Of a stretch of 64,000 nucleotides of DNA, positions 16,601 through 63,833 are shown one piece after another; position 1 is the first letter of the stretch, and every line of letters starts with the position of its first letter. The stretch is taken from positions 31,452 through 95,451 of the forward strand of contig DF237305.1 of NCBI GenBank assembly GCA_000708835.1, given 5' to 3'. The notes beneath the pieces were generated by a model that worked only from the letters and a program-made list of their open reading frames with translations, was not told where the DNA came from and ran no database searches. Both the position numbers and the translations under genes were made by a program. This stretch comes from Klebsormidium nitens. Taxonomy: Eukaryota; Plantae; Klebsormidiophyceae.

Positions 16601-19600
16601 CCTTCTCGCGCAGGATTCGCATCAGCGCGTTGATGGCCACCGTCGGGTAGTACTCCTCGCTGCTCGTGCTCATCCCGCTGCTCGGCAACACCTCCCCCGG
16701 CAAGTCCGCCTCCACCAGCGCGCTGCGCGCCATCCCGCCGTCTGCGGGCGCTGCGGGCCGCCCGCCCTCCGCGTGGCCCGCCTGCAGCAGCATCTGGTTG
16801 CGCTTGTGCGCGTGCGGGTCCAGCGCGCCGATCACGCCCAGCACCTGTGACGGGCAGCAGGGACAAACGTGAGGGGCAAGCTGCGGAGGACGCCAGGGTT
16901 TGCAAGCTGGCATTGATGCCGAGACTGAGGGCTTGGTTTGCAAAGGGGTCGCAAGACGAGGGTTGCTTGCTGGAAGGAGCCAAAGGGGAAGAACGAGATC
17001 CGGATGATATATCGCGTTAAGAGTATTCTGGATGACGCCCTTTGACTGCCTGCCTGGTCTGGACAAGTTAGACGGCCACGAGCGGGCTCTGGGGTGGTAT
17101 GGGGGCATGCGGCGCACCTTGAGCACTTCGTGGCGCATGGCCCAGGCGTGCTCCCCGTTGAGCAGCCGCAGCAGCACCCCCAGCAGCTGCGGGAAGTCCG
17201 TGTACGGCACCACCACGTACCTGCACACGAGCCACAAAGCACGCGCCAACTCAGCCGGACGTCACTGTGCTGTCCCCGAGATGAATTCAGATCTTCAGAT
17301 CTTTGACGGAATAAGCGGAGCGATCGCGGGATGAATATGTCGAAAATGACTCAACACTTTAGGATCGTACAGCAGGTTGAGCAGGTTCAAGGGCAGCAGC
17401 AAACATTCCCCTACTCCGTCGACTTGTTCCTAACACAGAGCGTGCGGTTCCTCACCCGGTGCTCTCCACGAGCTGCCCCAGCGTGCAGACGGCCACCTGG
17501 CGTCGCTTGCTATCGCTGCCGGTCCCGCCGTCGTGCAGCGCGTCCACCACCAGCGGCATCAGCTCGCCCACGTATGGTCGCATCGTGCCGCCACCCTACA
17601 CCAGGCAGCCAGGTTGGGCGCTTCGGTTGACATAAGGTCGATGCTCTTCTCGCAGTAGAGCGTCAACTCGATTGAGTCTACTCCAATCAAGCAGTCAATA
17701 ACCACCAACAGACCCTCACGCACAGAAAATGGATTGAAAGAAGTTACAAACAGGAGTGGGCTCGAGGCCAAGAGATGAGATTCCTTTTCGAAATTAACGA
17801 AAGTTTAAAAATCCCGCGCCAAGCGTTGTGAGACGTCATGCCGTCAGTCTTTCGCACCAGCAGCTTTGTCAACGGCCTGTGCTGGTCATGCGGCGTCGCT
17901 GCTCACCACTCTGGCAAGCTCTCCGACGGTAGCCAACACGTTTGTGATGACGCCACTGCGGCCGCCCCCGCTGCTAGTTTCCCCAGTAGCAGCCCCCCCA
18001 GTGGAACTCTCCCGCAGCTGGGCGACCAGGGCCTGCGACACAAAAACAAGCTTTGAGCCACCTGATGTTAGGGCACCAGCCGGAGAATCAAGACAGTAAA
18101 CGACAAATATGCAACAGAAATCTATTCTTACAAAATCCACCACTCTGATCGCAGGGGCAGGAGGTTTGCACGTTCGGCTTACCGCATGCGCGTGACTCTT
18201 TATCCATGAACACGACAACTTACCTTCAGGACGGGCGCGATGTAGGGCAGAATGAGGCGCGGGCAGGCGTGCACCAAACAACCCAGCAGGCGTGCGCTTT
18301 CTTGCTTGTGCTTGCTGTCCGAACTGCACCCCACCGATCATGGAGATAGATCAAAGAGCAGCCACGACACTTGAGGCGAGTGTCAGATGCCAGTAATCGA
18401 CATAGGCCGGCTTAATCTGCAGCAACAGATTCGGCTCGTGTCCAGAGCAGGTTTTGAGAAGTGGGGTGCTGAGGATCACCTGTGCTCCAAGTCAGTGAGC
18501 AGCTGCAGCAGGTGGCGGCGCAGTGCGGGCAGCACGTACGCAGGGTTGCGCTCCGCCAGTTGGCCCGCCAAAGTGATGGCGTACTGGCGCACCTCGAACG
18601 ACTGCAGGGCAGAGCTACCCCAGTCGATAAAAAAGCCGTGCGCAAGACTCAGGCAGGAAGTGAGCACAAAAGACTCACGATGTTCGTTGTATCAGCGCCT
18701 TCTCGTCTCCTCGTTGAGAGAGAAGAGCCATGAAAAGGTATCCAGCCGGCTTCAATGGTGCACTAGGACAGCTAAACATTCTCAAACTCGACAAGGAGCT
18801 CGCTCCGCATTTTTACTCCCAGCTTCCTCCCTGTCTCGTGTGGCCCAGTCTCACCTCGTCATTGAGCGCGATGAAGACGGCCCGCAGGCTGTCCGCCTGC
18901 GCAAGGTTCTCCTCGAAGCCGGCCCCCTCCGGCAGGCTCAGCAGCACGGCGCGGCGCACGCCCTCGTCTGCGTCCGCAACGGCCGCTACCAGCAGCCGCT
19001 CCAGCACTTCTTCCACTAGCACACGCTTGCGCCGCGAGCCTAGCGGGCGGCCGTCACGCGGCAGCCGCAGCCCCGCACCCGCCACGCTCGCCTTGAGCAG
19101 GCGGCAGCACGTGACGGCCGCCTCGCGCCGCGTGTGCACCTCGTCGTCGTCCAGGTAGCGCACCACGTGCTCGCGCACAAACTCAATCATGTCGTGCCCC
19201 TACGCACAGCGATGCCAGAGGACGATGGGTTGAGTGGAGGCACAAACAAACATAACATTGGTTGCAGGAATTGAGTCGATGCAGCAGATGAAGAGCTGTT
19301 CCGCTGTCTCAACGTTGGGCTCTGCGGAGGCTGAAGTCCAAAAAGAAACCTCGTTCACTGCGTGTGCATCGCCCGAGCTTTGGACACCGGCGCCCACATC
19401 AAGCTTTCTTATTGTCGTTGAATGATCCTGTTAATAAGCACAATCCAAAGGTCAACTGGCGAGGTGTGGCGTCGGCTCACGTTGAGGTCGAAGGTGGCGA
19501 GCGTGCGGAGGGCGAGCTGGGTGAGGCCGGCGGCGGTGAGCTCGGACTGGAGCACGGGGCTGCCCAGGCTGGGGCTGCGCGCAAGGGGGCTGGCAGCACT

Positions 19601-33718: not shown

Positions 33719-36700
33719 TCACCTTCTCTGTCTGGGCTTGTATCTAAACTCTGCTAGCAGAGCAATGTGATCCGACGACCATTCGGGGCTGGGCAGGCCC
33801 GTGTCTTTCCGGAGGTCCTCCTCGTTCAGCAGCTCCAGCAGAGCCTCCGGCTGCAGCGAGTCCGCTGCACACGCAACAGCAACGCGCTCAGCATCCGCTG
33901 TGTTTGCATAACAGCTGCTCATCAGATGCCAGATCAACAGTTGCCACGACAAGAACAACAGGCTCTTCGAGCATCCGTGCCAGATAGTCGCTCATCAAGG
34001 GAAAGCTTTCCGCAAGAGTGAGAGTCACGATAACGACTCTCAGTCGAAGGCCGGTGTGTCGAGCTAAGCACTAGCCCACTCTGATTGCCCACTTAATGTG
34101 CGACAAGTGGCGGCCTTGGCCGGTGTGCCTTGCACACTCACCTGTATAGAAGATGTAATCAAGTGTCCCCAGGAAGTCTCTCGTGCAATTGGTGAAGAGG
34201 GGCTCCTGTGTAGCAGGGTCGATCTTCCGCCGGAGGGCCTCGCCGTTTGGCCCCGGGACACGCGCGAAAGCTCCGTACGCGCTCACCTGCGACGACAATG
34301 GTCTGCTCAAAGCAACGCCCTGCCACAACGTAATGCTGTGCAGCAACAGGCCTCCCAGCACCGTGCTTAGCTTCAAAGCATCATCAAAAACGATCCGTCC
34401 AGCATCTACGGTTTACACTCTTCTCCACCTACTACGCAAACGAAGCTGCAAAGTCTGATTATGCATATTCTAAAATGGTGGCGTGCCATTATCGCCATGC
34501 TCACCAGCGGCAGCTGGTGCTGCAGCTTGGTAGCCGGCCGTAGGATGCCCAGCGGGTCCGTGGCCAGCTCCGGGTGGGCGGGATCCACGCGGCCCGTCGC
34601 CAGCAACGAATGCGGGCAGCTGCACACAAATATGACAGCAATGGCATCAGTAACGCAATTTATGTAGCGGTGCTGCACTGGTATTAACAGCCGTTGTCGG
34701 TGAACGGAAGGGAGCTAGCCCCGTCCGTGTAGCCCGCGTCTTGCAAGCAGACTCCAGACTGGACGTCACCAAGTCCTCGGTTTTGACCAAGGAACAGGTT
34801 GCCCTTCCAGACTTGACAACCGCATGACCCCAAGTCGGTTACAATGTAAGAAGGACCCCAGGACCCCAACGATTTCACCCAGACCCAGAGAAAAGCTTGG
34901 CCTTCCAGCAAGCCGACCACGACAACTTCCCAAGGCCGTCCCCTCTGACTGACAAGATGAAAGACGTCCAGCCAGGAAATGAAACGGCAGCAATTGCAAG
35001 TGGTGTCGGCCACTGACCTTCCGGGGACGCTGTTGAAGTCCCCTGCGACTAGCATGGGAATGTCGGCGCTGGCCGCGATCTTCTCGAGGCCCTTGAGCAG
35101 CGTGTGCACCTGCCACAGCTTCACGTCCTTCAACTCCGGGTTGGCGTGGATGTGCGTGTTGGCCTGCAACACAACCACCACCTCTCGCCAGTGAGCCCCC
35201 ATCAATATCAGACATCCAAAGACCCAAAACGTGGATAAGCTACCCAAGAAACTGCTTTAGAAAGCAATCTAGCTCAGTAGAGTCGGCTCAGCTGGCCAGG
35301 GAAGCAGGCCAAAACCAGTCCGCCGAATGTGTTATGCCGTTCAGATCTTGGAGCTTTGACATGGCGAGCAACCAGGCATCCACAGTGCAGCATCTGGCGG
35401 CGCAGTCCTGTAGCAAGGCGGGAGGGAGTGCTGCGCTGCTGACCACGCAGAGGAGCTGCCTCTTGCTCTGCCCGGGCAGGGGCCCGTCTGCGCCCTCGTG
35501 CTCCTTGGCCTCCAGCACCACGATGAGCGCCACGTTGTCCTTGAGCAGGCGGTTGAGGGCCGCCTTCTTGGACGCGGCGGGGCCCAGCGCCTCGCTCAGG
35601 GACAGCGCGGCCTTGTTGAACTCGACCTCGTACTTCTTGACTAGCGAGAAGCGCGACTCCTTGAAGAACGTGGCACACCCGTCGATGGCGTATGACGACC
35701 CCGTGTACACCTGTAAGTTAGCAGGTGGTTTTGTTGGTTTAAGAGGAACATGGAAGGGGATTGGACACTACACGGTGGGATCAGGGGAACTTGCTTGGCG
35801 GCATCACGATTGACCGCCTAGGCCCAATGAAGACGAACGCCGAGGGCGTCAAGCATGCCAAAGTTCAGGAGCAGGGGGAACTGTCACCAAGCCATGTGTG
35901 CATAGAAGTGAGGGCGGTGGAGGGGGATGGTAAGGTTGGATTGCTGACCTGGCTCACCTCGCCGGTCTTCTTCTTGTACACGGCCGCATACCCGTGCTTC
36001 TTGAGCTCCGGAGCAAAAAACTCCTCGTAGTGATCGCTCTGGACCTGCAGCACAAGACAGGCCCTGCCTTGGTCAGGGACTAGCAAGCGCTGGGCAGCAC
36101 GAGGCAGGGAACCCTAAATTGCGTCAACCTCCCCCCAACTCTGACAGACAATAGCGTGTGCTCCAAATTCTCTTAGAAAGCTGAGGGGGCGTCCATTGTG
36201 TGGTTTGCATTGGTGCATTTGAGGTGCTGCCTGACGGCTCACCTCCTGCAGGCAGAGGATGTCCGCCCGGTAGCCCACCAGCTCCTTGAGCAGGTTCTGC
36301 TTACGGTACGCCCACGAGAGGGCCCACGGCGGGCAGTAGCTGTACATCTCGTTGGTGGCGTACAGGTCCGCCAGCACATTGTACGACACCACCGTGAAAG
36401 TCCCCGGCTTTATCAATCGCTCCCCGATCTCGGACGTGCCCTCCCCAAAGATGGACACCATCCTGCGCGGGGTGGGCGAGGGCGCGGGGATCACGCGCGA
36501 GGTGAGCAGCGTGGAGGGCGCCGCCACCGGCTGGCGCGTCTTGGCGTCCATGGGCGTGCACTCCAGCTTCAGAATGTGGCCCACGTCGTCCGAGCTCGGC
36601 GTGTAGCTCTTGCCCTGCCCCACCTCATACNNNNNNNNNNNNNNNNNNNNNNNNNNNNNNNNNNNNNNNNNNNNNNNNNNNNNNNNNNNNNNNNNNNNNN

Positions 36701-37648
36701 NNNNNNNNNNNNNNNNNNNNNNNNNNNNNNNNNNNNNNNNNNNNNNNNNNNNNNNNNNNNNNNNNNNNNNNNNNNNNNNNNNNNNNNNNNNNNNNNNNNN
36801 NNNNNNNNNNNNNNNNNNNNNNNNNNNNNNNNNNNNNNNNNNNNNNNNNNNNNNNNNNNNNNNNNNNNNNNNNNNNNNNNNNNNNNNNNNNNNNNNNNNN
36901 NNNNNNNNNNNNNNNNNNNNNNNNNNNNNNNNNNNNNNNNNNNNNNNNNNNNNNNNNNNNNNNNNNNNNNNNNNNNNNNNNNNNNNNNNNNNNNNNNNNN
37001 NNNNNNNNNNNGGGGCCGGATACGCGGCCCCGTTTGGCAGCCCTATGATGCTGCGCCGCGTGGCGTGGCTGCTCCCAGGAGGCCCCGTGCCAAAGAGCTC
37101 CTCCTCCTCTGGTGCGGTGTTGTTGCCATTCTGGTCCTTGGCGGGCGCGGCGGCCGCGCGTGCATGCAGCTCCTTGTGATTGCGCCACGCGGCGGCAAAG
37201 CACTGGGGGCTGCAGTGGTAGCTCTTGGCAGCCGGCAGCTTGGCCTTCACGCACAGCAGGCACTGCAGCGTGGCCACCTCGCTTGGGTGGACGCTGCACA
37301 CAGCCACCCGCTTCTCGTTCTTAACCCGTAGCCTGCAGGAATGGGAGTAGTTGAAGTTAGCGTCCCCTGCCCTTGAGCGATGTAAAATGCAACTCCAGCT
37401 GGCAGCATGTAATGAGGGTTCGCTGCGAACCAGTGCCTGAACAAAGCTCTGCAAAGATGAACATTTTCCAGACCGAGTCCTTGTTCTTACCATTTGCACT
37501 GAAGGTAGTAGCCTTGCACGGGCGCGCCCTCTGGAATGTCATCGGTAGTGATGCTGTTGTCTGGCTTGCGCAGAAGCACGTACGGGGTCAATTCACAGCC
37601 CGCGATCGGAATGTCCGAAGGCAAGTGTGTTCTCAGAACGGACAGCAT
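33719..37648 (-). CDS. CCR4: Carbon catabolite repressor 4 homolog (plant CCR4a/b-type EEP deadenylase of the CCR4-NOT complex)
   Basis: Starts MLSVLRTHLPSDIPIAGCELTPYVLLRKPD. Includes CSVHPSEVATLQCLLC...SYHCSPQCF, FTVVSYNVLADLYA, ADILCLQEVQSDHYEEFF, IDGCATFF, NTHIHANPELKDVKLWQVHTLLKGLEKIAASADIPMLVAGDFNSVPG, FTNCTRDFLGTLDYIFYT and LPSPEWSSDHIALLAEFR, then a stop at 33719-33721. Confidence 0.96.
36631..37011. other. Assembly gap (N run) inside CCR4
   Basis: 381 consecutive N. Confidence 0.99.
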
Positions 37649-49834: not shown

Positions 49835-52800
49835 ATGGCGGGGATGGTGGCATCGCAGGCCGGCATGGGCGTCACAAAGCTGGTGACGCTCGTTGTTGGG
49901 GCAGGTAAGTACGCACAGGGTATACGTATGATTTAAGGGATCCAAATATTTTGCTTCTGTTTGAGTCTAGCTCGTTTCCTACATCGTATTGTGTGAACAG
50001 GCGTCCTGCTTTGCGAGTCTACCTCAAAGTACGGAGGTTTTCCGCATATGATTTACTTTCTGGTGCAGGTCTCGGAGGCGCATATGTGCTGGGTAACAAG
50101 AGTGTTGGGTCCTTGTTCTCAGATCTATCAAAGGTAGGTTTGCCAAACTTCACGCGCAGCAAACCCATGCCATGTAGCATTTAAGCGTGCGGCCACTTTT
50201 TCAAACTCTTGCCACTTTTTCAAACTTTTGCCTGTTGCGTTCCTTATAGTCTGGTTGACAGTGCTTACTTGTCTCGCTTTCCTTCACTGCGTATCCTTTA
50301 TGCTTGCAGGTTCTTACCCGCCACCTTGCTCCAAGTTCAGACAGTGAGCTGGGAGATGGGGACGGGGCTGGTCGAGGGATTGACGCAGCAACTGCAGCAC
50401 TGACAGCGCAAGTGAGTAGAGCGCTGGTTAGCAAATTGTGTTCCTCAGCCCAGGCCGCTGCTGTGGGCGATGAAGCCGCAATGCTGAAAGAAAGAGGGGC
50501 CCAAGACATACAGTTTTTCAAATCCGTGATTAACTGTTTGTCTCTTTTTTCGCCCAGGTTCGCCGCTTGTCTCAAGAGATGAGGCAGCTAGCCGCAGCTA
50601 CGGGGAGCCGAGTGACAGTGGTCAGCACCCGGGAGCAAAAAGGTGAGGAACGCTTGGGTTTGGCTGAGAGCGCTATCGCTGTATTGGGGGACCAGGCTAT
50701 CCCAGGAGTGTCTGACTATCAAGTGTTTAATTGAAAGGCTGGACAGCTCCCCAAAGAGACATGCTGTTCTTGCTCTCACTTGTGTTTCCTTTTGCAGGAA
50801 CTTTGGTATCATTAGCTGTTCCTATTGCGGTCGCAGGGGCAGGGGTATACGTCTACATGTACTTCAAGGTTAGTACAACTTTACGTTACTGCTTTGATGC
50901 GGAGTGGCTTTGGTGTAGCAATCTGTACATAATAAGATAAGTTCTCAGCTGTAGTGGCTCACTGTTGTCCTCCTGTGCCAATTGAAATTCTAGCGACGAT
51001 CGGCCGAAGATTTGCCCTCTTGCACTGCAGGGCGTCACCTTGGCAGATTTTATGTACGTCACCAAGAAGAGCCTCGACGGTGCCGTTGTCAACATGCAGA
51101 AAAGATTGGATCAATTTACAGCTTCTCTGGTGGTAAGTTGCTTTCCCAATGATATCCATAGACAAAGCACCTCAGAGGGCAGATCTTGAAGGATGCGAGT
51201 AGCTAAAAGTCAACCTGATGCTGGATCAGGTGGTCTTGTTCTGCTGACCACATGGATCCGTCGGATGAAAGGCAAGAGCAGTTCTATTCTTTCTGGGTCC
51301 TGCACGATCAAAATTGCGGAAAATCTTTTTGCAGGCCCACAAACGAGATATGGCAGGGCGCCTGGACAAAGTGAATCGTATTCAGGAGGAGGGTGCGGTC
51401 ATCCAGGGGCAGATCAAAGATCAAGTAAGGTCGACGGGTGATTTGTCAGCTCTTGGGTGACAGTTGCGTGCCCCATGGCAGATTCTCCATTGCTTATTAC
51501 CTGTAGTGATTGTTGCATCGAGGTTATGCTGCACTTGGATGCCAAGTTTTGCCAATCTGTTGATCATGTCCTCCTTGTGCAGGTTGATGAGATGAGTGGA
51601 AAAGTGCTCCGTGTGGGTCAGGACATTGAGGCGGTTCAGCGGATAGTTCGGGGACTGGTGAGGGCATTTCTAACAAAGGTCCAGCAAGAACAATTCAGAA
51701 GTTCGCAACGAACAGATGTTTCTGTCTGTAAATTTCCTATGGTCACTGAAAACCGATGCTGTAGCAGTGATTTCTTGCATGTTGCACACAGGAATGGGTG
51801 TTATCAGCTTCATTTGTGGTGCCAATATGCTGATTCTGCCCACTTTGCGTGCTTGTACAGGAGTACAAGCTGGAGGAGGTAACTGACAAGCAGGACTTCA
51901 GCAACCGAGGCATTATGTACCTGTGCTCCTTTGTCACGGAGGGCATCGAGGGCCGGCAACCTAGGCAAGAAACGATCCAGGTGAGCCGTCGAAAGGCAGC
52001 GGGCCACTGTAGGACGGAGAAACTTGTGTTTGGCCCTTGCAGCAATAGGGTGAGCAAACCACCAGACATCAAATCATATTGATTCGTCAAATCATGGCTG
52101 CTCCTTCTTCCTGGCTGCCTGAAGGCTGGCTGGCACGATCTGTTCCTCCGACTTTGTTGGCTCCAGTACATACATTCTGTTGTATGCAGGGCCTGCGTGC
52201 TCTTCGGCTCGACCGAAGTGCTTCCATGCCCATGGGCAATGGCCAATCGTTGTCTCTCAAGGTTAGGCTGCATTCTTCGACTTCCTTGTTTGCAAAGTGT
52301 ACAAAAGTTCTTGGTGCCAGTGCCGGGCTTGAAGGTCTACTTTCAATTGAAAGTTTTGAAACTTGGTGAATTGACATCCTGTGTTCTGCTGGCGAACTTG
52401 ACCCTGTTGATGGATGTATCTCTTAAAGTTCGTGCGTATCGAAGGCATGGGCCGTTGATCAATCGTCCTGATGGCTGAGAGTTGTCTCCTCAAATTGCTA
52501 GATGTTTCAAGCACGTTGCGCTTGTAGATCATGTGCATATGTCTAAGTCTTCACCTTGGCTAGAAGAAGGAACCGTATATGTCTCTTGCCATGTAGCTTG
52601 CTCGGGCGTATGTGCTGTTCTTGGTAGTATGAAAGTTGAGATGTCTAGACAACTCCCTCAATCATTGTTGTCCTGTCGCGAACATGGAGGCTTGGTCTCT
52701 TTCTACTGGCGATATGGTTTGATCAGTGTATCCTTCTTCGTGCAGGGTCTACAGCTTCTGTCAAATGGAGTTGGCAACGTTGCAGCCAGCAATGCTGCCA

Positions 52801-53130
52801 GTGGTGCCAGCACAACCACAAGCTCACCAGCAGACTCACCACACACAACGTTACAAGGGAATGGAAGGTAAGGGGATACGCTTGTGCAACCTGTTGGGCA
52901 AATGCTCCTTCTAGAACACTGGTTATCTTTTGCCATCGATACTCTGGATATTGTACTCCTATGTGGACTTCTTTGCAGCCAAGTTCGGACTTATTGCAGA
53001 TTCCCCATAGCAGATTGGGAAGTTGAACTCCTGTTGCATGGGGAAGCACGTTAGAAGCCCTTTTCGTACTTTTGTGTTGTGAGATTCTAATCTTCTTTTT
53101 CTTTCCATATGCAGATCAGGATACGGTTAA
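49835..53130 (+). CDS. DUF1664-family protein (plant, membrane-anchored coiled-coil)
   Basis: MAGMVASQAGMGVTKLVTLVVGAG-LGGAYVL...SLAVPIAVAGAGVYVYMYFK-GVTLADFMYVTKKSLDGAVVNMQKRLDQF...EYKLEEVTDKQDFSNRGIMYLCSFV matches the plant DUF1664 pattern. The 3' end is uncertain: stop at 52871 if unspliced, or about 53130 if the last GT-AG intron is used. Confidence 0.85.
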
Positions 53131-54911
53131 GTGAGCATTTTTTGGGCCCCTACTTGTCATACTAATATCTGTACAAAGTCAATATAGTGGATCTTGAAGC
53201 TTCGGGTCGAACTCGGTGAGGATTTTAAATGTCTTTTGGTCATCCGTCTGGTAAACCAAACGGTGATGTTCATAAGATGTGTGTATTTGCAGCATCAATC
53301 GAGGAGCGTGTTCGAAGATGTTTCAATAGTCACTATTGCATATGTGCTTTGCTGAGGAACACGTTGTATATGGTTGCGTGCTTCTAGACAGGTTGTGCCG
53401 CCTAACCGGGCAATACGATGCTCAGACGACCTTGCCGATGGTCTCTTTTCGTTCTCGCCGTAGCCAAATAGGCCATTCACTTCTCATGGCATACATGTAT
53501 GAAGTGTGTGTTTCTTGGTGCTACCGGCGTTATCTTTAGGCTATGCTAGCTCAACTCTACCAAGTATTCTAAATATCCCAGCCGAAGCGGAAATTCCAAT
53601 CCTATTACAATTCGTGTTCGTTGCATAAACTTGTCTCCATGTGCCAATCCACTACCTAGCTTGAACGTAGTCACAAAGGAGGAAGAGCGGCAGCCGCGGA
53701 TGGGTATGTAGATGCTGGTAGAATATCGGCAACTTCGGGCTAGTGCAAAGCTAAACACTGGTTTAAGTCGGATACATAACGCTGATCATGTTATGTAATT
53801 CGTCGGATAAAGCGTACGTTGACATGGACTTTGTGTGTGTATATGGTTGGGTTCTTGTCGCATCTGTGCTAATTAAGCGTGATAGCGTAAGGGCCACCCA
53901 AGTTTGTGAATAGGGTCACGAGATAAGAGAGCATGGCGGCAGCTCGAATGGATGCCGATCTCAACTATACCTAGATGGATGTATGCTCGCTTTTGGTTGG
54001 GAGCTGCTGATCACTGAGGAGTCATTGCATATTCATGTGCCCGGAAACCAATTAAAATCACAAACGGTTGGTGAAAGTCCGTCACTACAACCTGACGAAC
54101 TCCTATCCTAAAGAACGTTTCATAGAGAATGTTTTGGCGTCGAACCACTGTCGCCAAATAGACGACTCAGCATGCATGGCGCATACGGTACGGAGTAGGG
54201 CGAACTAGAGCTGTGCAGTTAATAGAATCCGACATTACCGTAAAAAACCGGGGTGGGCTCTGACGCACGGTCGCCGGGAGCGTGACCTGGCGGGGGGAGT
54301 CCCTATTCCGCGGACCGGGAAAACGCGGAAACTTGGAAACCGCGGAATATAATCGGCCTCCTTTCGGATTTCTCCGAGATGGGGGGGGCATTAATCCTGA
54401 AAATTATGTTATTGTGCGCGCGCAGCCCGCATTATCTGCCGGTTATGAAGTATCATTGAAGTATTAGAAGTACTGTCTGACCAGTCCGACAGCCCGCTCG
54501 GCTCGGCCTCCGGAGTCTCCGTCAAGGCCTCTTGACCTCTAGCTAATATTATACCTGTTCACGTCTATAATGCACATGCGTCGCTCACTCAAATCGCAAT
54601 ATGGCAGATGCTCAGTTCGCTTCTTTCCCAACTAAGTCAAGTGCGTCATCTTCAAATCTTCATGCGGAATGAGAGCGCGCCACAGAAACAGCAAAAAGAG
54701 TAGCTTCCCAGCATGCATATCTAGGAACATAGCTAGGAAACATAGCATTACCGATACCTTAGGCATCTCAGTCTGCTAGAAACAGAGAAAGTTCTTGGCA
54801 GAGTCAGTGTTCACTTTTTGTTGGTTGCCGGCCCGCGCTTGTAGAAGCAACTGAAAACGCTTCAAATAGGTTGCTGCATCGTTAGCTCAACATAGCATTG
54901 TCAGTAGCCGC

Positions 54912-57900
54912 ATGGCGCCAAAAAAACAGGTTGCGTTTGATCTGTCGCGCAACCGAACAAAAGAGATCACTCCAGTCAAGAGAGCATTGACAGATGAACC
55001 ATGTGTCTACCGTACACCTGGCAACAGTATTGCTGATAGACAGGAAGCAGCTCTTGGAAGTATTCAGCACCGGGAGCTGGCACCGCATGCATTTCTAGAT
55101 CCCCCATGTACAATTCACGCCCGCAGAAAACCTAGGCTTGCTTCCAATTGCAGCCTTTCTCTTATCTGCGATCAGACGGCAGCAACAACATCTCCAAAAG
55201 CAGCAACTACTTGTTCACGCACACTAACGAGCTTTGAGGGGTTCCAAGCATTTGCTGATAGCCATCCGGAACTAGCTTTCCGGAACACGGGGTAAGCCAC
55301 CGATTCAGATGTGTTTGTGCTCACAGCTTGCTCCATAGCTGCAATCTCTTGCTCTTTTCGAACATTGGTGTTTTCCACCACAAAAAGTGATTAGGGTTTT
55401 GTGCTTCCTCACCACCCTCAAAATCGGAAGCCAGATCAAGGCTGAGATATCTACGTTTCAAATGCGGGTGGTTTCAGGGTAGGTCATCCTTTCTCACGTG
55501 TAACTTTGAAGGCTAGCCCATATAAGCAGCTCCTTTACCGATCTAGGATCTTGCTCTAACTTCCAAAATGTATGACGTTGTGCAGTCAACCTAACCTCCT
55601 CTGGCATGCGTACGTGAGCACCTACAAGCCCGAGTACATGACAATGGCAGGACTTCCTAAAAGTAGACAAGAGGTCAATGCCCTAGAGGTGAGTCAACAT
55701 TTTGGGGGCGGACAACACCTCGGATCCAGATTTCCAGTCTCTGCAAACAGTTCTCTTGCCAGAAGATGTAACATCAACATGTCAAGCCAAGGATCTTCCT
55801 CTACGTTCGACCGCCTCTAAAGCACCCTAAAGTGAGCCTTATACCACGACTGCATTTTCATTTGCAGGCAAGGCACCCTGGGCTAGTGTTCAAAGCGGTG
55901 ACCTATAAGAGAGAAGCATACAATGCCAACGACATTGCGACACAGCTGCGAGATCCGGGGCATCCAGCACAATACGCCGAAATCACAAACGTGTATGACA
56001 CAGTGGACTCCATTGATGCCCTCCGCGTGCTCGCGGCAGGCTTGTTCGGAGCAAAGGCCCGCTCTCTTGCGCCGCTGAACTCAACATGTTCAACCACTAT
56101 CAATTGCTCCCCCATCCGGTAAGCTCGCAGATCAACGCCTAGCTCGTGCGCACCTTAGTTTCTTCCTTGCATTCTTGTAAGTTTTGAAAGGCATTATCGC
56201 CCTTCTCGATTGTCTCTTGAAGCCTGTCAATGTACCTCTGTTGGAGTTTCTTCTTCCATCACTTGACACATTGCAGTTAAGTGTGTCACGCCAGTCGGGT
56301 GGCCACCAACGTGCTCTTTTCATCAGCAGGCACCCTGTTGTCAATTTTAGAGCAGCCTAGTTACTGCCGCTTGACTTATCGCCTCTCCAGTTTCAAACTA
56401 CCTTCTACACGCGCATTTCTGCCTTGACAGCAAGACCCCTCTCATTGCACAGGTTTGGACCAGAGTCCGGCGTGCTCCCGCTTGCTGGTCGCCGCCTTGG
56501 GGCTCTGGTAACACCACACAAGAGAGATCATGTCTTAGCTAGGGAGGAAGCCATTGCCTTCATGTCCAGTCGCAGCTTTTTTGAGAACCGTGGCTTGCGT
56601 GACGTGCACATACCCCGTCCCGGTGCAGACTCAGCGCATAGCAGCCTGGCCTATTTCTGGGAGAAAGCATGTGCGCGAAAAGGTGGGGCATGCGAGGATT
56701 CGAGTTGCATTCTGGTGCAACTTCGTGGCGTTTTGAATCGCGGCCTACCGTTCATGTGCTAAGGGTTGCCAGCGAACTGAAGAGCTTCTTGGATCAGAAT
56801 CGTTTACTCGGGCCGAGTATGAAGACATGAAGCACAAATGAATACACCTTTCAATCATTGCCGCTGCCCAAAGCCCAGGTCGCGGCTCCACAAAATCAAA
56901 TCTCAGTAAGTCCACACTGCCGGTCTACAAAAGGCACCTACATTCCCTCGATTTTAAGCGTGACGGTTCATACAAAGACCTAAAACATGAAAGTCTTCTT
57001 TGCAGGATTGCAGCTTCACTCCCCAGCTGACTGGTTGACATGGCCATCTCAAGATGTCATCCCGGTTGGATGCAGTCCTCTTACATCTACCTTCTACCTC
57101 AAGGGCTTTATGCATCTCACTGACGAGCACCATGAGTTGCTTGGCTTGACGGCAAGGAATGGGGTCTTCTGGGCCTCGTCGATTCTTCCTGTGGGGGAGG
57201 CGCTCCTCTGCGTTTGGAACCATGGCCTTGAAAGCGACGAGCAGGTTCGTCCTTTAAGTACACTTCTCCTCTTCACTACTAGTACTTGCCAAGATTGTGG
57301 TTTGTAGGACTCTTTAAAGTAGGAGTCGGTCCATTGTCATCTGCTTCCCTCAGGATCAAGGCTGGATCAAGGCTTGACAAGGCTTGACAAACCCCGCTAT
57401 CTACTAACAAGATTCAAAAATTTACTTGTGATAAGTAGGACTTTAGGATATTCAAACAAGTGCACTGGTCCCGCGCTAACATTTTAAATCCACGTACTGC
57501 ACACAAAGTGCTGCAAACCAGATTTCATTTACTTTGCGGCCCTCAATGTCCAGCCTTGATCCGCATCGGAACTTTCTGTCACGGATCTTGAAAGGTTCCA
57601 ATGTAAACATGGTTTCTACTTTAATAATCCCGACTTGAAGCTTAGAGGACCTCCACAGTCTTCAATTCCTTCGACACATCCCGTTCATACGTCCCCAGCC
57701 AAGAATTATTAGCCAAGATCTCCAGCGTAGCGGCAAACCCGCATCTTTCATTCTCGCAGCTGAAGGCACGCTTGAAGGCTAAAGAAGACGAACTGCTGAA
57801 GGAATTGGACCCTGGAGAGACCCGCGAGCTTGCCGCCATGCAGCCCGGCTGCCTTTGGTTCGGAGTTCGACAAACTGATGCGAACGTTGCGGCTTTCCAC

Positions 57901-60024
57901 CGACTCTGTTCCGTAGCCTTCGGGGAAGATTATCTCCAACTCTTCTTGCAACACTCGGCGGATGACATTGTCCCACCGGCCGCCATGCTCAGCTTCATCA
58001 ACCAGCTCTTACCCGTCGAGGCAGCATGGTTCCTCGAGATCTCAATGGCGTTTCCCCCGGGGTTCCTTGCCGAGCATGGGATTGATATCAACATCGGGTA
58101 GGACACTCAGCTCGCGTCGCCTCGAGCGCACGGGCCCCAATCATGGAAGCCCTTGCTCGCTGGTTTAGTAGTAACGTGTTTCATGTATCCTAGATACTGT
58201 GTGGGCCCCAAATATTAGTTCGAGTAACATTCGTTACACGAATCAGTGTGACATAAAAGGCAGGCGTCCGCTCGAATTGCGTAGAGATTGCTCTTGGTTT
58301 GCACAAATGTTCTGAAAACCGTCCGTTATTAGACTTTCCTGCTGCCGTCATAGAGACGTCCGTTCAAGTTCTACGTAACGTGACTACGCACCACGTACAT
58401 TAATGCTTTCGTCAAAGCTATGCTGCTTTTGCTCAACCGTGCGTTACCACTCCTTTCTACTACAGATGGCAAGATCCCGGAAGCGACTTTATTGCCGCTG
58501 CTAGACATGCTGTGGCGACCTTTGGCCGTAACGCCACAGGAGCGCACAACTTTGCAACAGCCAAGGACCTTTCCCGATGTCTGCTAAGCAGAACCTACAT
58601 TACCAGGAAGGATCCAACGGCACCACCAGGCTGGACGGAAACCAAGTGGATGAAGGGAATTGACGCACCGTCTCTTGTCATAAAGGTAATATGGTACTCT
58701 TGTAGGCTCCAGCCGTATACGATACGTGATTCTTCGGTCACGTCGATTGTCCTTCCATGCTAACATCAACGCAGGACTTGTGTTCTGGCTTGCATCTATA
58801 TCATAGTTTGCCCCACATCACTGATCACACACAAGCGGCTGTAAGTCCAGATGGCTATATGAAGAGTTGGAGACCACCAACCACAACGCGAACTTAACGA
58901 GGATTGATCTAGTTCACCGAGCTTACTCTTCTAAACCGAGGTTTGATGCCTCCATTACTCGTCGAGGGCGATTTATACTTTCTTTAGCAGGCCCTCCGTG
59001 TTTTTTAAGGCTCATCAAAACAGTTTTGTATTGAGGCCAGCCAGAGGTATGAATTGCAGCTCATGGAGAGTTGCCCGGTGGACATGCTTTCGCCGGCGGA
59101 GGCGGCCGCCTTCCGAGACGAATTTCAAGCTTTGGGCGAGCTCTTCTCTGACCAACACAAGAGCACCGAGTGAGTTTTAAAGACACCTGAGACACGCAAA
59201 TTGGAAAGCTCTTCGTATATATAGGACACGAGAAGATTAAGCAGCATAATACTTTGTCTTGTTTGTGACACCCCAAAGCTTTATAATTGACATCTCATAC
59301 GTCTCTCGAAGTAAATGCCACTCAGGGTCAGGATGACGGCCAGTACTCTAGCTCATAGCGCTTGCTACGATTCTCTAGCATATCTGTTCAGCTCAAACAA
59401 GGCAACTCGATGCGCCACGCTCGTTTGATTGAAGTGAACTTTCCCATCAGATGAACTCGTATTGATTGGTTTAACCTCTCAACCGACTCTTAACAACCTT
59501 TCTGCAGGTTACAGTCGTTTTTGATGCGGCTGCAAGCCCGATGTGACACCGAGCTGCATGCGCAAGTGCCGCTTGCAAACGTTGGCTTCCACTCCCGCAG
59601 AGAAGGATCCGGAATGCTAGACGACGAGGACTGGTCGCGTGTTGTTGTTGAGACGAAACGGTATCCCTTTGCAACCGTTTTAGCGCGCTTTTTGCACGTT
59701 ACGTATCTCAGGCTGGAGATTCCTAAGGGCAACGACCTCACCTATCTCGTGCATCACGGGATTAGCCTGCTGAATCTTGTAAGAGAGGTCAACGAATATC
59801 AAAGGCAGTGGAAAGTAAGTGGTACTCCAGGTTCCTTCGCGGTCGACACTGGTGTAGTGCTGGAGGAGTCGGTTGTTGTCGAGCAACCTTTGAAAGGGCC
59901 AAATCAACAGGCGCTCGCGTGGTTCACGAGCACTTTATTGAGGGAGATTCTTGCCGTTCAGAAGTACTATCTGTCAACAAAGGGACCATTCAAAGGGACA
60001 TATTACGGTCTACTTAGAAGGTAG
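54912..60024 (+). CDS. Divergent JmjC-domain (KDM4/KDM5-like 2OG-Fe(II) oxygenase) protein, about 775 aa, 10 exons
   Basis: Phase-consistent exons 54912-55291, 55586-55688, 55868-56118, 56453-56682, 57006-57244, 57760-58097, 58466-58685, 59024-59169, 59508-59814 and 59911-60024. Motifs: PGADS (cf. YGAD); FYLKGFMHLTDEHHELLGLTARN (cf. [23 protein letters not shown]; H-x-E at 57128-57136); PGFLAEHGIDI; WQDPGSDFIAAARHAVATFGRNATGAHNFA (cf. QxAGEF...YHSGFNHGFNCAESTNFA; distal His at 58506-58508). The 3' end may extend past 60024. Confidence 0.75.
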
Positions 60025-61646
60025 AGTCTGACAGACCAACTTTTGAAGTTCTTGCGTTACCAACATAGCTGTACATATTTCATTGTAGGCCCCGACTGCA
60101 GCTAGGCACGTCTTGTGACAGCCGCCCGATTCTAACACATGTCACTTTCCGCATCATGTATTTTCCAATATGAATGTACACCCGTTTCTGTCTCGAAACC
60201 AAGAGTGCCACTTTTTAAGGTTTCAGGCTTGCTTTCAAATCTCTATGCTCCCCGTTATCGAGCCGCCATCTTAACGCACGCACATCATTCTTTACTTGCC
60301 CAAAACATTCGGAGTATGCCTGCACCAACGAAACTGTTTCAAAGGAACTCGTGCGGTACGTTTTTCCCTCGGTCATCTGCAGTGATGCTACGACGATACA
60401 TCTGTACAAATGAGACTATGCCCGGAATCCCGGAAGATTCGACACCCATATATATTAACGTGACATGTATTTGCATGGCTTAATGTCTGGCAAGGAAGGT
60501 ACATCAAGCTTGACGTTGTGAAGTTTTATCCCGTTGAGGGAATTGACGGCGAAAAAAAACTTGTCTGTTGGCAATCTTTGCATAAAGCATAAAAATGTAT
60601 GCGACCATGGCTTCTCCGAGTATCACCTTAATACAACGGTTCAGGGAAACGGATCAAGGCTTAAACTCGTCGACTTTTAGCCCACAATTAGTACCTCCAA
60701 TGCAACCCCGCATCCATGGTCCTTCCAGGAATTCTTCAAACATGGCCTAACAAGAATGATGAGGCACATATCAGATTTTCAAAACACTAGAGTTTCCAAG
60801 AAAGTTATCTGCACGTGCGCGAGTCTACGCATGTTTGTCAAATTCGGTTCACAATGGTGAAAGTTGGTATTCGGGTCGGTTCCTCCGCTCTACTGCTACA
60901 TCGTTATTCGATGACCCTTTTGGATGGCAGATTATTACTTTCGCCCCCGCTTATTCTTGCGTTGGGAAAGCAATTCCGTTATGTAAGCTTTAAATCCTTC
61001 TAGTAATCTCTCTTGCCCAGGACTCAAGTCCTCACCATCCGCTCCAAGTCGAATCTTGAACGGCTCTCCATTGTAACCCTGTGCGGCAGAGATTTCCACA
61101 TAGCATCCAAATACGAGGCTCCTTTGGGACAGGTTTTCTAGAGGTCATCTAGCAAAGAAGCCAGATGTTTTTCGCCAACAACAATACTCATGCCGAAAGC
61201 TTTGCCAACCAAGATTTGATGCTCATAAACGGTTGAGTCGGTCAACAGCCGACCAGATTCTATAATGACACCGTATAGCTTCAACCAATTCATGCGGTCT
61301 CTGTGCTTTAGAAAGCCACTCGATCGGTGTCTTACCGTCCCTTTATTTAGCATGCAACGCTGGAACGCGCCAGCGGAATCCATAACGCAGAACTGCTTGG
61401 CCCACGACTTGGTGCTAGCAGACTGCGTTGGCCTGCACGGGATCAGCTGAGGGTGATGGCAGATCCTGACCTCTAACCAAAGAAAAATCATTCATTGACA
61501 TTCCAGAGAGTGCATAAAGGCTCACTGGTGAATCGAAGGACGCCCGAGTTTTAGAATGAGAAGGGTGTGTCATCTTAACGATGGAGCTCCGAGCCTTGAT
61601 CCACTTGGCTAGTCAAGCGGCACCGATCAAAGTGAGATAGTCTAAG

Positions 61647-63833
61647 CTACAAAGTTTGCATCAACGGTAACTTCAAGCAAGAATTGTGTCTTTGAAATGC
61701 AGGAAAACGTTCACCGTTCAACAGGCCCGTGGTAGCAATCTTAGTTGCCACCCAAAATTTCTTGATTCTTCGAAGTTTGATGAAAGCGTACCTGATTGTG
61801 TCGCGTGGTGTTTGCCTTATCATCCGGGGTTGATCCCTACGGATTGTTATCTGGCACGACTGGCAAGCGGGTTCCAAGCCCGCCCGAGCCCCTGAGATCG
61901 CAAACGTCCAGGGGCTCTCTTCGTTCTTCCCCTCTGACGGCTTATTTGGCATGCCCCCGGTGGCAAAACCGCCGGAAGCCCGGGCTCCGCTAGGAACCCC
62001 CCTCTCAGGCCCATCACGGGCCTGCTCCGCAGTCCTTGTTTGGGGACTCGAATCGCCTTCCGTCCGTCGCCGCTTCTCATTACCGTTATAGTCCGCCCCG
62101 GGCCCTTTCTCAGTCTGAGAGTCGTCACCCTCCGCTTCCGAATAATCCATGGGACCAGGCGACCGCGGCCGCTTTGACCGGGAACGCCGCATTCCGCTTT
62201 TGGCCCCGCCCCTCTTCGTTCCTTTTGTGTCGGGCCGCACCCCATACACGCCTCGCCGACACGACTGCGTCATGTTCTCTGCATGGCTCTTGGAGGGGTT
62301 GTACAGGCGAACGAGCTCGCCGAGCGGACGCCCCGTTTTGAGGTAGATGGCCAACACGTGCGAGCAGAGTGGCCCCCGTTTTCTCCTCGCGGCCCTCTGC
62401 GCACCGCGGCATGGACATTGCAGCCGCTCCCCGAGCCTTCCCATCACCGAGTGCGGATGTAGGGGAGCGCTATTCGAGTGGACCAGCCACGCGGTCTCAC
62501 TGGAAGTGCTCTCGCATCTGTTGTTGATGCATCTGCGGGCGCTAAAGACCAGCGCTATGGCATGTCTAACCGCTCGAACCACGCCCAGCTTGAGCAACTT
62601 AGCCGCAATCGCGTTACCTTCCTGCGACATGAAGGTCCGCAGAGAGGCCGCTTCTGCTGGTGACGGACCCTCAGGCTGCCTCCCACGTGGAACTCCCCCG
62701 GCACCCCAGCCAAGCTCGACATTGGGCCGCGCGTCTGCCGCGAATTGGCTGAGCGGCAGAGGTGGCCAAGGCAACTTTGAGCACACTGCACAGTGGCAGC
62801 GTCCGTCCCTTTCGTGCTCCCGGTCTACCACGCGTGGTCGAGCTCCGCCTACTAGCCCCGTGGGACCGATGATGTGCTTGTCGAGCTTGACTTGCACTTC
62901 GGGAATCCTTCCGTCCGGGTCTCTACCCACCTCCTGGGGATCCTGCGCGAGGTCCGTCCACATGTACGCTCTCTTTGGGCGGTAGATGACGTCTTGGCAC
63001 GCAAACCCCCGATCCATCTGAGACAGCTGATCGAGACTGTACTCCTTGCACGCATCCACCATCTCGACCATGCTAACTTCTCTTCCGCCCGCCGCCCGAG
63101 AGAGCGCCTTGTGCAAGCTCTCAATGTCTTGCGTGTAGACGTTGTCCACCGTGCCGTCCGCAAAGATCAACCCCGCCTGCCTCCTTGCCCACAACGAAAG
63201 CTCGTTGACAAAGACCTTCTTCTTATTTCTCTCGAAGTACTCACCAAACCCCTCCGGCCAGGCCGTTATCCGCTCCCGAATAAGCCGCTCCGCCTCCTCT
63301 TGGCTCGCCGCTTGTATGATCCCCTTCCGCCCAGTTTGCTCGTCTCCCAAAAGGTCTCGGCGGATGCCCCTCCAAACCTCTTCGCCTGCACTTCCGCACT
63401 CATCCTTTACCTTCTCGTGGCAATTTTTGAGGATGTGGTTCAGGTCGGTGCCGTGCCAAGCCAATGGGAAAGCCCGCGCAAGAGCCTTCTTTAGGTGCCC
63501 GGCCCCATCCGAAAATACCCATCTCGCTTGGCCCAGGCTTTCCTCTTCGTGAACGAGGTCTCTCAAGAACCGTGACGTTGACTCCTCCCTTTCCGTCAGT
63601 ACGATCGCCAAAGCGACCAGCATTACTGGATCGCCGCGGAGAAGAGCGTTGCGGCATCCCACTGGCAGCAGGAGAAAGGGGCCCTTCCGGTACGTGTGGT
63701 CAAACGTCAGCGGTGTCGCCGAGTCCCCATACGGCCCGTCGTTGGAGCAGAGCATCCCGCAAAGACGAAGGGCCCTATAAAAGGTATCATCATAACACAG
63801 ATTCCTCAGTAATTCACGGTACATGCATTGATT
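61647..63833 (-). mobile_element. Mutator-like (MULE) DDE transposase with SWIM zinc finger; 5' exon(s) beyond the window end
   Basis: 725-aa ORF (63824-61647). TFDHTY (D42), WVFSDG (D106), the MULE C/DxxH motif AFPLAWHGTDLNH, YTQDIESLH (E235), and SWIM C470-x-C472-x14-C487-x-H489. An in-frame splice acceptor (ctcttag) just upstream of the first ATG, at 63834-63835, implies more N-terminal exons. The C-terminus is probably spliced (GT donor at 61791). Confidence 0.88.

What the first reader, a model, noticed from the sequence alone, without database searches (positions are those of the whole stretch)
54912..60024. Intact, highly divergent JmjC gene invisible to the ORF track
Seen: ten phase-consistent exons with no stops. 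The Fe(II) triad H-x-E...H is intact, and the spacing of HAVATFGRNATGAHNFA matches the KDM4/KDM5 motif HSGFNHGFNCAESTNFA. No PHD, ARID, C5HC2 or FYR domains are visible, and the C-terminal third is unrecognised. Established: KDM4/KDM5-type JmjC enzymes demethylate H3K9/K36 or H3K4, and plant IBM1 (KDM3 class) removes H3K9me2. Inference: a non-canonical demethylase or hydroxylase unlike host housekeeping KDMs.
Basis: partly seen in the sequence, partly recalled or inferred. Interest (0 to 1): 0.75.

Follow-up and report, generated by a model that had tools for sequence, protein, structure and literature searches.

The report
Mis-annotated divergent JmjC-like algal gene
A real, conserved, ten-exon gene of the green alga Klebsormidium nitens, wrongly spliced in the public annotation, carries the active-site pattern of histone-demethylase-type (JmjC) enzymes and lies next to a jumping-gene enzyme, but no profile or fold search could confirm its enzyme class or show that it belongs to a transposon.

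Summary
The window is Klebsormidium nitens contig DF237305.1; the gene is KFL_003560170. Exons 5, 6, 7 and 9 are confirmed by three related environmental loci. Intron positions and phases are identical for the end of exon 5, both ends of exon 6 and the start of exon 7, and exon 6 gives dN/dS of about 0.16. GenBank's 484-aa model skips conserved exon 7, which holds the second catalytic histidine. Exons 1 and 8 have no support beyond being open.

No Pfam, NCBIfam or PDB sequence hit was obtained exon by exon, and two AlphaFold runs were useless. The one positive test is that exon 5 carries exactly the published JMJD3 (KDM6) spacing Y-x-K-x5-T-x2-H-x-E-x7-N (expected 2.5e-6 by chance), kept in a 45%-identical homologue. 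So the pocket looks KDM6-like rather than KDM4/5-like, with about 85 extra residues between the two histidines.

The family is very rare: four loci among 1.8 billion representatives. A divergent MULE transposase-like gene lies tail-to-tail, but the contig ends there. No terminal repeats or extra copies were found, so transposon membership is unproven.

The scan has noted other JmjC-like genes beside transposon genes elsewhere in this genome. I did not test those notes.

The parts
54912..55291 (+). Exon 1 (ATG at 54912; basic, low-complexity N-terminus)
   Evidence: Open frame, GTAAGC donor. It is not in the GenBank model, has no homologue evidence and has an atypical GC3 of 0.38. Unverified.
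55586..55688 (+). Exon 2
   Evidence: AG/GTGAGT, phase-consistent. GenBank's model starts at the ATG at 55638 inside it.
55868..56118 (+). Exon 3
   Evidence: AG/GTAAGC. Shared with GenBank model P0002.
56453..56682 (+). Exon 4
   Evidence: AG/GTGGGG, 230 nt (2 mod 3), which is what is needed to link exon 3 (ends in phase 2) to the conserved start of exon 5. It lies in a 133-codon open stretch. Skipped by GenBank. No homologue evidence, because the related contigs are too short.
57006..57244 (+). Exon 5: first half of the putative JmjC core
   Evidence: tblastn to L004 gives E=6e-16 over the whole exon, including the 23 residues GenBank omits. The donor position is identical in L004.
57095..57160 (+). 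Active-site motif Y-x-K-x5-T-x2-H-x-E-x7-N (H41 at 57128-57130, E43 at 57134-57136)
   Evidence: Exact match to the spacing of JMJD3 Y1379, K1381, T1387, H1390, E1392, N1400 (PMC11417268, PMC6055880). 0 of 200,000 shuffles matched; expectation 2.5e-6. All six residues are kept in L004, with one inserted residue.
57760..58097 (+). Exon 6: family-specific helical insert, then the middle of the putative JmjC core
   Evidence: Homologues in L002 (60% identity), L003 (41%) and L004 (31%). Acceptor and donor positions and phases are identical in all four loci. blastn of L002 aligns only 57752-58099. pN 0.22, pS 0.66.
58466..58685 (+). Exon 7: Q-x-P-G-S-x-F ... R-H-x-V-A ... N motif with the second His (58506-58508)
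   Evidence: tblastn gives E=5e-14 to L003 and 7e-11 to L004. Acceptor position and phase are conserved. H14 and N28 are invariant. Skipped by the GenBank model.
58775..58840 (+). Exon 8 (66 nt, phase 0-0, optional)
   Evidence: Splice sites are fine, but there is no homologue match. L003 has only 139 nt between its exon 7 and exon 9 equivalents. Skipping it keeps the frame. Unverified.
59060..59169 (+). Exon 9
   Evidence: Weak match in L003 (E=0.011) and a visibly similar stretch in L004 at 2212-2343. GenBank uses an acceptor 16 nt upstream because it skips exon 7.
59508..60024 (+). Exon 10 with TAG stop; C-terminal region of unknown fold
   Evidence: 176-codon open stretch. Shared with P0002. 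No Pfam, NCBIfam or PDB hit. AF2 gave pLDDT 36.
60935..63755 (-). Neighbouring gene KFL_003560180, a MULE/SWIM transposase-like protein, tail-to-tail with the JmjC-like gene (context; link unproven)
   Evidence: P0001 is 100% identical; gene range. Weak hits, below Pfam's cut-offs, appear in the expected order: MULE (aa 16-111, 20.6 bits), Transposase_mut, SWIM (aa 444-473) and IS256. The contig ends 167 nt upstream of the open frame.

Best explanation
KFL_003560170 is a functional, intron-rich gene for an approximately 800-residue nuclear protein. Its middle part (exons 5-7) is most likely a very divergent JmjC-fold Fe(II)/2-oxoglutarate oxygenase. In the KDM6 (JMJD3/UTX) style, His41 and Glu43 of exon 5 and His14 of exon 7 would hold the iron. 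Tyr30, Lys32, Thr38 and Asn51 of exon 5 would hold 2-oxoglutarate. A family-specific insertion of about 58 residues sits in the hairpin after Asn51, and the two histidines are 165 residues apart instead of about 80. No reader or DNA-binding domain is recognisable. By analogy, the protein would hydroxylate a methyl-lysine, with H3K27me3/2 as the first guess from the KDM6-like pocket, or another protein side chain. The family is restricted to a few Klebsormidium-like organisms and evolves fast. Here it lies tail-to-tail with a divergent Mutator-type transposase-like gene, so it may be, or derive from, the accessory gene of a MULE. Shown: gene structure, conservation, purifying selection, residue pattern, rarity, adjacency. 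Inferred: the fold, catalysis, the substrate, and any link with the transposase.
For: Splice model. Exons 5, 6 and 7 are conserved in L002-L004, and intron positions and phases are identical for the end of exon 5, both ends of exon 6 and the start of exon 7. Only the exon aligns at DNA level. dN/dS is about 0.16 on exon 6. Exon GC is 0.50-0.60 (0.47 for unsupported exon 8) against 0.43-0.49 for introns. The published JMJD3 spacing (PMC11417268; PMC6055880) matches exactly in exon 5. Expectation is 2.5e-6 and 0 of 200,000 shuffles matched. All six residues are invariant in a homologue that is only 45% identical. The second His and the Asn 14 residues later are invariant in three sequences with 38-41% identity. 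Only four loci exist among 1.84e9 representative proteins.
Against: There was no JmjC or cupin hit in Pfam or NCBIfam, and no PDB-sequence hit, for any exon, for the exon profiles or for the annotated protein. ESM Atlas found nothing. The AF2 model of P0002 had pLDDT 38 and showed mostly helices. The His-to-His distance is twice the usual. The residue at His+10 in exon 7 is Thr/Ser rather than JMJD3's N1480. I recognised the KDM6 pattern after reading the sequence, so its P-value is somewhat optimistic. The homologue set is tiny: 2-4 sequences per exon. No transcript evidence was available. Exons 1 and 8 are unsupported and exon 4 rests only on the frame argument.
Confidence: 0.6

Rival explanations
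1. It is a real, conserved orphan gene but not a JmjC oxygenase. The motif resemblance is coincidental, and the His/Asp/Glu-rich conserved stretch serves another purpose, for example a different metal site or a helical protein-binding surface.
For: There was no profile, PDB-sequence, language-model or structure support. The low-confidence AF2 model is mostly helical in exons 5-6. The His-to-His distance is 165 residues.
Against: Six residues match JMJD3's pocket at exact spacing, with chance expectation 2.5e-6. They are invariant in a 45%-identical homologue. A collinear second motif with an invariant His and Asn follows in exon 7. All the negative searches used fragments or a mis-spliced protein.
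Confidence: 0.25
2. It is the accessory (second) gene of an autonomous Mutator-like transposon, and it erases repressive histone methylation on the element: a self-encoded anti-silencing enzyme.
For: The gene lies tail-to-tail with a MULE/SWIM transposase-like gene only 910 bp away. Both genes are essentially unique in very large protein databases. Both sit in a block of lower GC (0.47-0.51) than the 42-46 kb flank. Two divergent paralogues occur in one sample, which suits a mobile family. MULEs are known to carry second ORFs, including the anti-silencing VANC (PMC6446971).
Against: No terminal inverted repeats were found and the contig ends inside or just before the element. No second copy of either gene was found in K. 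nitens. The nine introns are more typical of a host gene, whereas the transposase ORF is almost intronless. The related contigs are too short to show linkage. The MULE hits are below Pfam's cut-offs.
Confidence: 0.35
3. It is a host lineage-specific (or long-domesticated) JmjC-like gene that merely neighbours a dead MULE relic. It may even act without catalysis, as the fission-yeast JmjC protein Epe1 does.
For: It is single-copy, intron-rich and under purifying selection. The neighbouring transposase-like protein has its MULE domain at residue 16 with no N-terminal DNA-binding part, and a long low-complexity tail is visible in its sequence. Epe1 is a precedent for non-enzymatic JmjC function (PMC7192584, abstract only).
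Against: The family is absent from all other streptophyte proteomes in the databases, which is odd for a useful host gene. The apparent truncation of the transposase may be an artefact of the contig end. All predicted metal ligands are kept.
Confidence: 0.35

Closest known systems
KDM6 subfamily JmjC demethylases (JMJD3/KDM6B, UTX/KDM6A)
   Same: The spacing of the pocket residues Tyr, Lys, Thr, His, Glu and Asn (JMJD3 1379, 1381, 1387, 1390, 1392, 1400) is reproduced exactly in exon 5. A later His followed by x-Val sits in a Q-x-P-G context. From my own memory of KDM6 sequences (not tested), the start of exon 6 (P-G-C-x-W-F-G-V) also resembles the KDM6 strand that follows the Asn.
   Different: No Pfam JmjC hit on any piece. 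About 85 extra residues lie between the two His. His+10 is Thr/Ser rather than Asn1480. There is no CxxC pair in exons 7-10, so no KDM6-type zinc domain. No TPR. Orthology was not tested.
KDM4/KDM5 (JMJD2/JARID) JmjC demethylases, including plant REF6-type H3K27 demethylases
   Different: The 2OG-binding Lys at His+18 is absent. No JmjN, PHD, ARID or C5HC2 hit. 'NFA' occurs only in the window copy.
Second ORFs of Mutator-like elements (maize mudrB, yeast mutB, Arabidopsis VANDAL vanB/vanC)
   Same: An extra gene lies beside a MULE transposase-like gene. VANC is a precedent for element-encoded anti-silencing (PMC6446971, PMC10398659).
   Different: No sequence relation. VANC is described there as a DNA-binding anti-silencing protein and the abstract names no enzymatic activity. 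Here membership in an element is unproven, with no TIRs, TSD or copies.
Epe1 (fission yeast JmjC anti-silencing factor)
   Same: A JmjC-type protein thought to oppose heterochromatin.
   Different: Epe1 is a host gene and acts largely non-enzymatically (PMC7192584). No sequence comparison was made here.

Membership tests
JmjC 2OG/Fe(II) oxygenases (Pfam PF02373) | Significant match to the JmjC profile | tested here: inconclusive
No hit at E<=10 for any of the ten exons, for the homologous exon ORFs or for the mis-spliced GenBank protein.
JmjC 2OG/Fe(II) oxygenases (Pfam PF02373) | Fe(II) facial triad H-x-E/D ... H | tested here: met
   H41-x-E43 in exon 5 and H14 in exon 7 are invariant in all available homologues. 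The assignment rests on motif spacing, not on a structure.
JmjC 2OG/Fe(II) oxygenases (Pfam PF02373) | Double-stranded beta-helix fold | tested here: inconclusive
   AF2 of P0002, which lacks exon 7, gave pLDDT 38. The ESM Atlas model had pLDDT 0.30. Neither is usable.
KDM6 (JMJD3/UTX) subfamily | 2OG/metal pocket residues Y, K(-9), T(-3), H, E(+2), N(+10) | tested here: met
   Exact regex match in exon 5. 0 of 200,000 shuffles matched and the expectation is 2.5e-6. L004 keeps all six residues with a one-residue insertion. Residue numbers come from PMC11417268 and PMC6055880.
KDM6 (JMJD3/UTX) subfamily | About 80 residues between the two metal histidines; Asn at second His+10 | tested here: not met
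   The distance is 165 residues. Position +10 is Thr/Thr/Ser in the three sequences.
KDM6 (JMJD3/UTX) subfamily | C-terminal helical plus four-Cys zinc-binding domain | tested here: not met
   The translations of exons 7-10 each hold a single Cys and no CxxC pair. The defining feature itself is quoted from my own knowledge.
KDM4/KDM5 subfamilies | JmjN domain and 2OG-binding Lys at His+18 | tested here: not met
   No JmjN hit. The pattern H-x-E-x7-N-x7-K is absent.
Autonomous Mutator-like element (two-gene MULE) | MULE DDE transposase | tested here: inconclusive
   MULE 20.6 bits (cut-off 27.6), Transposase_mut 14.1 bits, SWIM 11.8 bits and IS256 14.8 bits appear in the expected order, but all are below their cut-offs.
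Autonomous Mutator-like element (two-gene MULE) | Terminal inverted repeats and 8-11 bp target-site duplication enclosing both genes | not testable with these tools
   The contig ends 167 nt beyond the transposase ORF. No inverted repeat links 53000-55000 with the last 300 nt.
Autonomous Mutator-like element (two-gene MULE) | Several copies; both genes linked in related loci | tested here: inconclusive
   Only self hits came from K. nitens for both proteins. The related contigs are 0.9-2.6 kb and hold no transposase match.

The most novel reading that the evidence does not exclude
A Mutator-type DNA transposon of streptophyte algae encodes its own KDM6-like JmjC demethylase, which strips H3K27 (or H3K9) methylation from the element. 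This would be an enzymatic, element-encoded counter to Polycomb/heterochromatin silencing, in a lineage where transposons in related early-diverging plants are reported to be marked by H3K27me3 (10.1101/2022.10.24.513474).
Probability: 0.15. Interest if true: 0.85.

Novelty: new variant of a known kind. Interest (0 to 1): 0.5.

Why it matters
If the JmjC reading holds, this is a previously unrecognised and very rare JmjC family that current profile libraries miss when scanned piecewise. It has a KDM6-like cofactor pocket and a large insertion. It occurs in the green lineage, where the known H3K27 demethylases in Arabidopsis are KDM4-type (PMC7296913). Its position beside a Mutator-type transposase raises a testable idea: that transposons can carry a chromatin eraser as an anti-silencing weapon. 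That would be an enzymatic counterpart to VANC of Arabidopsis VANDAL elements. On a practical level, the public model of KFL_003560170 is wrong, because it skips a conserved catalytic exon. That error explains why the protein has stayed 'hypothetical' and folds badly in the ESM Atlas model.

Tried and rejected
1. Pfam and NCBIfam on each exon, on the homologues' exon ORFs and on P0002 gave nothing relevant.
2. phmmer and profile searches of exons 5, 6 and 7 against PDB sequences gave only chance hits: a GFP-like protein, papillomavirus E2 and an ankyrin design.
3. ESM Atlas on exon 7 and on P0002 gave no usable hit.
4. AF2 of P0002 with a 4-row alignment gave pLDDT 38, and AF2 of exon 10 gave pLDDT 36. 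Both were too poor for fold search, so it was not run.
5. Word-based homologue searches found nothing beyond the GenBank protein.
6. Two JGI metagenome scans and three IMG/VR scans with exon alignments found no relatives.
7. TIR and repeat searches around the gene pair found nothing convincing.
8. I considered a TET/JBP-like reading (H-x-D, H-A-T-T) by eye. I dropped it because the first motif is H-x-x-D or H-x-E rather than H-x-D, and because the collinear G-I...Q-x-P-G...H...N stretch is JmjC-like.
9. An in-frame alternative junction, from a donor at 57164 to an acceptor at 57843, would delete the 58-residue insertion and give a canonical hairpin length. I rejected it as the main form because both flanks of the insertion are conserved as protein, with conserved exon ends, in L002-L004.
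10. MAFFT placed the exon 5 piece of L004 on exon 6 of P0002. I took this as an alignment artefact or weak internal similarity and did not pursue it.
11. Literature searches for a transposon-encoded JmjC found no report.
12. The joined spliced protein was never built, searched or folded.
Full report
WHERE THIS IS. The 725-codon ORF next to the finding is 100% identical to Klebsormidium nitens protein KFL_003560180. Its contig is DF237305.1 of GCA_000708835.1, 95,451 bp. The window is contig 31452-95451, so window position 64000 is the contig end. The finding corresponds to KFL_003560170 (GAQ87490.1, A0A1Y1I974), annotated as a 484-aa hypothetical protein spanning window 55638-60024. The rest of the window holds ordinary nuclear genes, for example mTOR on the minus strand.

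THE OBSERVATION. I rebuilt the exon chain from the three-frame open stretches and checked every junction. There are ten exons, all with AG acceptors and GT donors and consistent phases. They total 2454 nt, which is 817 codons plus TAG. No ORF of 180 aa or more exists in the region. Exon GC is 0.50-0.60 (0.47 for exon 8) and intron GC is 0.43-0.49. The description is accurate.

INDEPENDENT SUPPORT FOR THE EXONS.
- An exhaustive HMMER search of exon 6 against 1.84 billion representative proteins found only five hits. These were the GenBank protein, three exon-sized ORFs from environmental or SRA assemblies (P0003, P0004, P0006) and one repetitive false positive.
- The contigs of the three ORFs are L002 and L003 (Logan SRR23617210) and L004 (ENA ERZ26165376).
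- tblastn of each window exon separately against these contigs shows exon 5 in L004 (E=6e-16). Exon 6 is present in all three (E=4e-50 to 1e-16). Exon 7 is in L003 and L004 (E=5e-14 and 7e-11), and exon 9 matches weakly in L003.
- The exon 5 donor, the exon 6 acceptor and donor, and the exon 7 acceptor sit at the same codon position and phase, with GT-AG, in every locus that has them.
- At DNA level L002 aligns to the window only over 57752-58099, which is exon 6 plus its splice signals.
- On exon 6, window against L002, pN is 0.22 and pS is 0.66, giving dN/dS of about 0.16.
- So exons 5-7 and 9 are real coding exons under purifying selection.

THE GENBANK MODEL IS WRONG WHERE IT MATTERS. P0002 joins exon 3 to an acceptor inside exon 5. 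It thereby drops exon 4 and 23 residues of exon 5 that are conserved in L004. It also joins exon 6 directly to exon 9, dropping the conserved exon 7. Exon 5 starts in phase 1 and exon 3 ends in phase 2, so an intervening exon of length 2 mod 3 is required. Exon 8 (66 nt, phase 0-0) has no counterpart, and L003 has only 139 nt between its exon 7 and exon 9 equivalents. Exon 1 is unsupported and has an odd GC3 of 0.38.

IS IT JmjC? All the standard tests were negative or unusable.
- There was no Pfam or NCBIfam hit for any exon, for the homologous exon ORFs or for P0002.
- There were no relevant PDB-sequence hits for exons 5 and 7 alone or for profiles of exons 5, 6 and 7.
- The ESM Atlas gave nothing, and its own model of P0002 has pLDDT 0.30.
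- AF2 of P0002 with a 4-row alignment gave pLDDT 38.
- These negatives are weak evidence. The putative domain is split over three exons, and the only database protein lacks exon 7.
- I did not build, search or fold the joined protein. That joined step is the obvious decisive test and it remains undone.

THE ONE POSITIVE, QUANTIFIABLE RESULT.
- Published structures of JMJD3 give iron ligands H1390, E1392 and H1470. The 2OG/inhibitor contacts are Y1379, K1381, T1387, N1400 and N1480 (PMC6055880; PMC11417268).
- The implied pattern Y-x-K-x5-T-x2-H-x-E-x7-N occurs exactly once, in exon 5 (residues 30-51, window 57095-57160).
- The expectation from composition is 2.5e-6. None of 200,000 per-exon shuffles contained it.
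- The L004 homologue is only 45% identical, yet it keeps all six residues with one inserted residue after the Lys.
- In exon 7 the motif Q-x-[PI]-G-S-x-F...R-H-x-V-A...N is shared by all three sequences, with His14 and Asn28 invariant at 38-41% identity.
- The KDM4-type lysine at His+18 is absent.
- From my own memory of KDM6 and KDM4/5 sequences (not tested), the start of exon 6 (P-G-C-x-W-F-G-V) and the exon 6/7 junction (G-I-x-I-x-I-G / W-Q-x-P-G) are collinear with the JmjC strands that follow the Asn and precede the second His.
- Against a simple membership: the two histidines are 165 residues apart, compared with 80 in JMJD3. His+10 is Thr/Ser, not Asn. Exons 7-10 hold no CxxC pair, so there is no KDM6-type zinc domain.
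- I recognised the pattern after reading the sequence, so the P-value is optimistic. The residue numbers, however, come from the literature and not from this gene.
- I put JmjC-fold homology at about 0.65-0.7.

CONTEXT.
- 910 bp downstream, on the other strand, lies KFL_003560180 (window 60935-63755).
- It gives weak hits, all below cut-off but correctly ordered, to MULE, Transposase_mut, IS256 and SWIM.
- Its MULE domain starts at residue 16. The open frame stops 167 nt from the contig end, so its N-terminal DNA-binding part and one element terminus may simply be missing from the assembly.
- No terminal inverted repeats link the upstream region with the last 300 nt.
- A DUF1664 gene ending at 53130 bounds the left side.
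- Neither gene has another K. nitens relative in the protein databases. The related contigs are too short to test linkage.
- MULEs are known to carry second ORFs, including the anti-silencing VANC (PMC6446971; PMC10398659). I found no report of a transposon-encoded JmjC.
- The two-gene transposon reading is therefore attractive but unproven. I put it at about 0.35.

MECHANISM, WITH THE STATUS OF EACH STEP.
- Shown: a selected, spliced gene; an invariant H-x-E...H with a KDM6-spaced Tyr, Lys, Thr and Asn; no recognisable targeting domain; a rare, fast-evolving family; adjacency to a MULE-like gene.
- Inferred: a double-stranded beta-helix that binds Fe(II) and 2OG and hydroxylates a methyl-lysine or another side chain.
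- H3K27me3/2 is the first guess for substrate, from the KDM6-like pocket. In Arabidopsis that job is done by KDM4-type enzymes (PMC7296913).
- If the gene belongs to the element, demethylation of the element's own chromatin would counter silencing. H3K27me3 marks transposons in several distant eukaryotes (10.1101/2022.10.24.513474).
- A non-catalytic, Epe1-like role is an alternative (PMC7192584, abstract only).

EARLIER NOTES OF THIS SCAN. I did not check these except where stated. The same stretch was also read as a MuDR-like two-gene transposon (s1-310254). Elsewhere in this genome, other JmjC-like genes were noted beside transposon-type genes, and a 'KDM6-like' JmjC was noted (s1-299314, s1-339119, s1-261793, s1-261788, s1-344155). 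These notes may have primed my KDM6 comparison, which I then tested on this gene. The organism hint in s1-332491 was confirmed.

VERDICT. This is a genuine, mis-annotated, very divergent JmjC-like gene (a new variant of a known kind). Its enzyme class still needs the joined-protein profile and fold test, and its link to a transposon needs a better assembly.

Noticed in passing
window 57164 (GT) and 57842-57843 (AG): An in-frame alternative junction from inside exon 5 to inside exon 6 would remove the family-specific insertion of about 58 residues. It would give a hairpin of nearly canonical JmjC length (three residues shorter than my remembered KDM6 hairpin). Both flanks are conserved as protein in homologues, so it is probably not the main form, but it could be a minor isoform.
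   Followed up: partly
window 60935-63755 (-) and the contig end at 64000: The MULE-like protein KFL_003560180 has its MULE domain at residues 16-111 and no N-terminal DNA-binding region. Its C-terminal ~250 residues look low-complexity and rich in Arg, Gly and Glu. The assembly breaks 167 nt upstream of its open frame, as often happens at repeats.
   Followed up: partly
window 5402-17249 (-): Exons of an mTOR-type kinase gene, with PI3_PI4_kinase and mTOR_dom Pfam hits. This is an ordinary host gene and confirms a normal nuclear context.
   Followed up: no
window 36114-37499 (both strands): A 461-codon minus-strand ORF has zf-C6H2 and the start of an Exo_endo_phos domain. Long ORFs on the plus strand overlap it (377 and 189 codons), an unusual stretch that is open on both strands.
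   Followed up: no
window 57353-57390 (intron 5): A short tandem repeat with a 10-11 bp unit and about 3 copies lies inside the longest intron of the gene.
   Followed up: no
L002 and L003 (both Logan SRR23617210): Two paralogues of exon 6, 60% and 41% identical to K. nitens, occur in one sequencing run. The source organism or community therefore holds at least two diverged copies of this family. The organism could not be identified with the tools.
   Followed up: partly
window 50935-53130 (+): A DUF1664-family gene (Pfam PF07889 on the called product) ends about 1.8 kb upstream of exon 1. It sets the leftmost possible boundary of any element that holds the JmjC-like gene.
   Followed up: no
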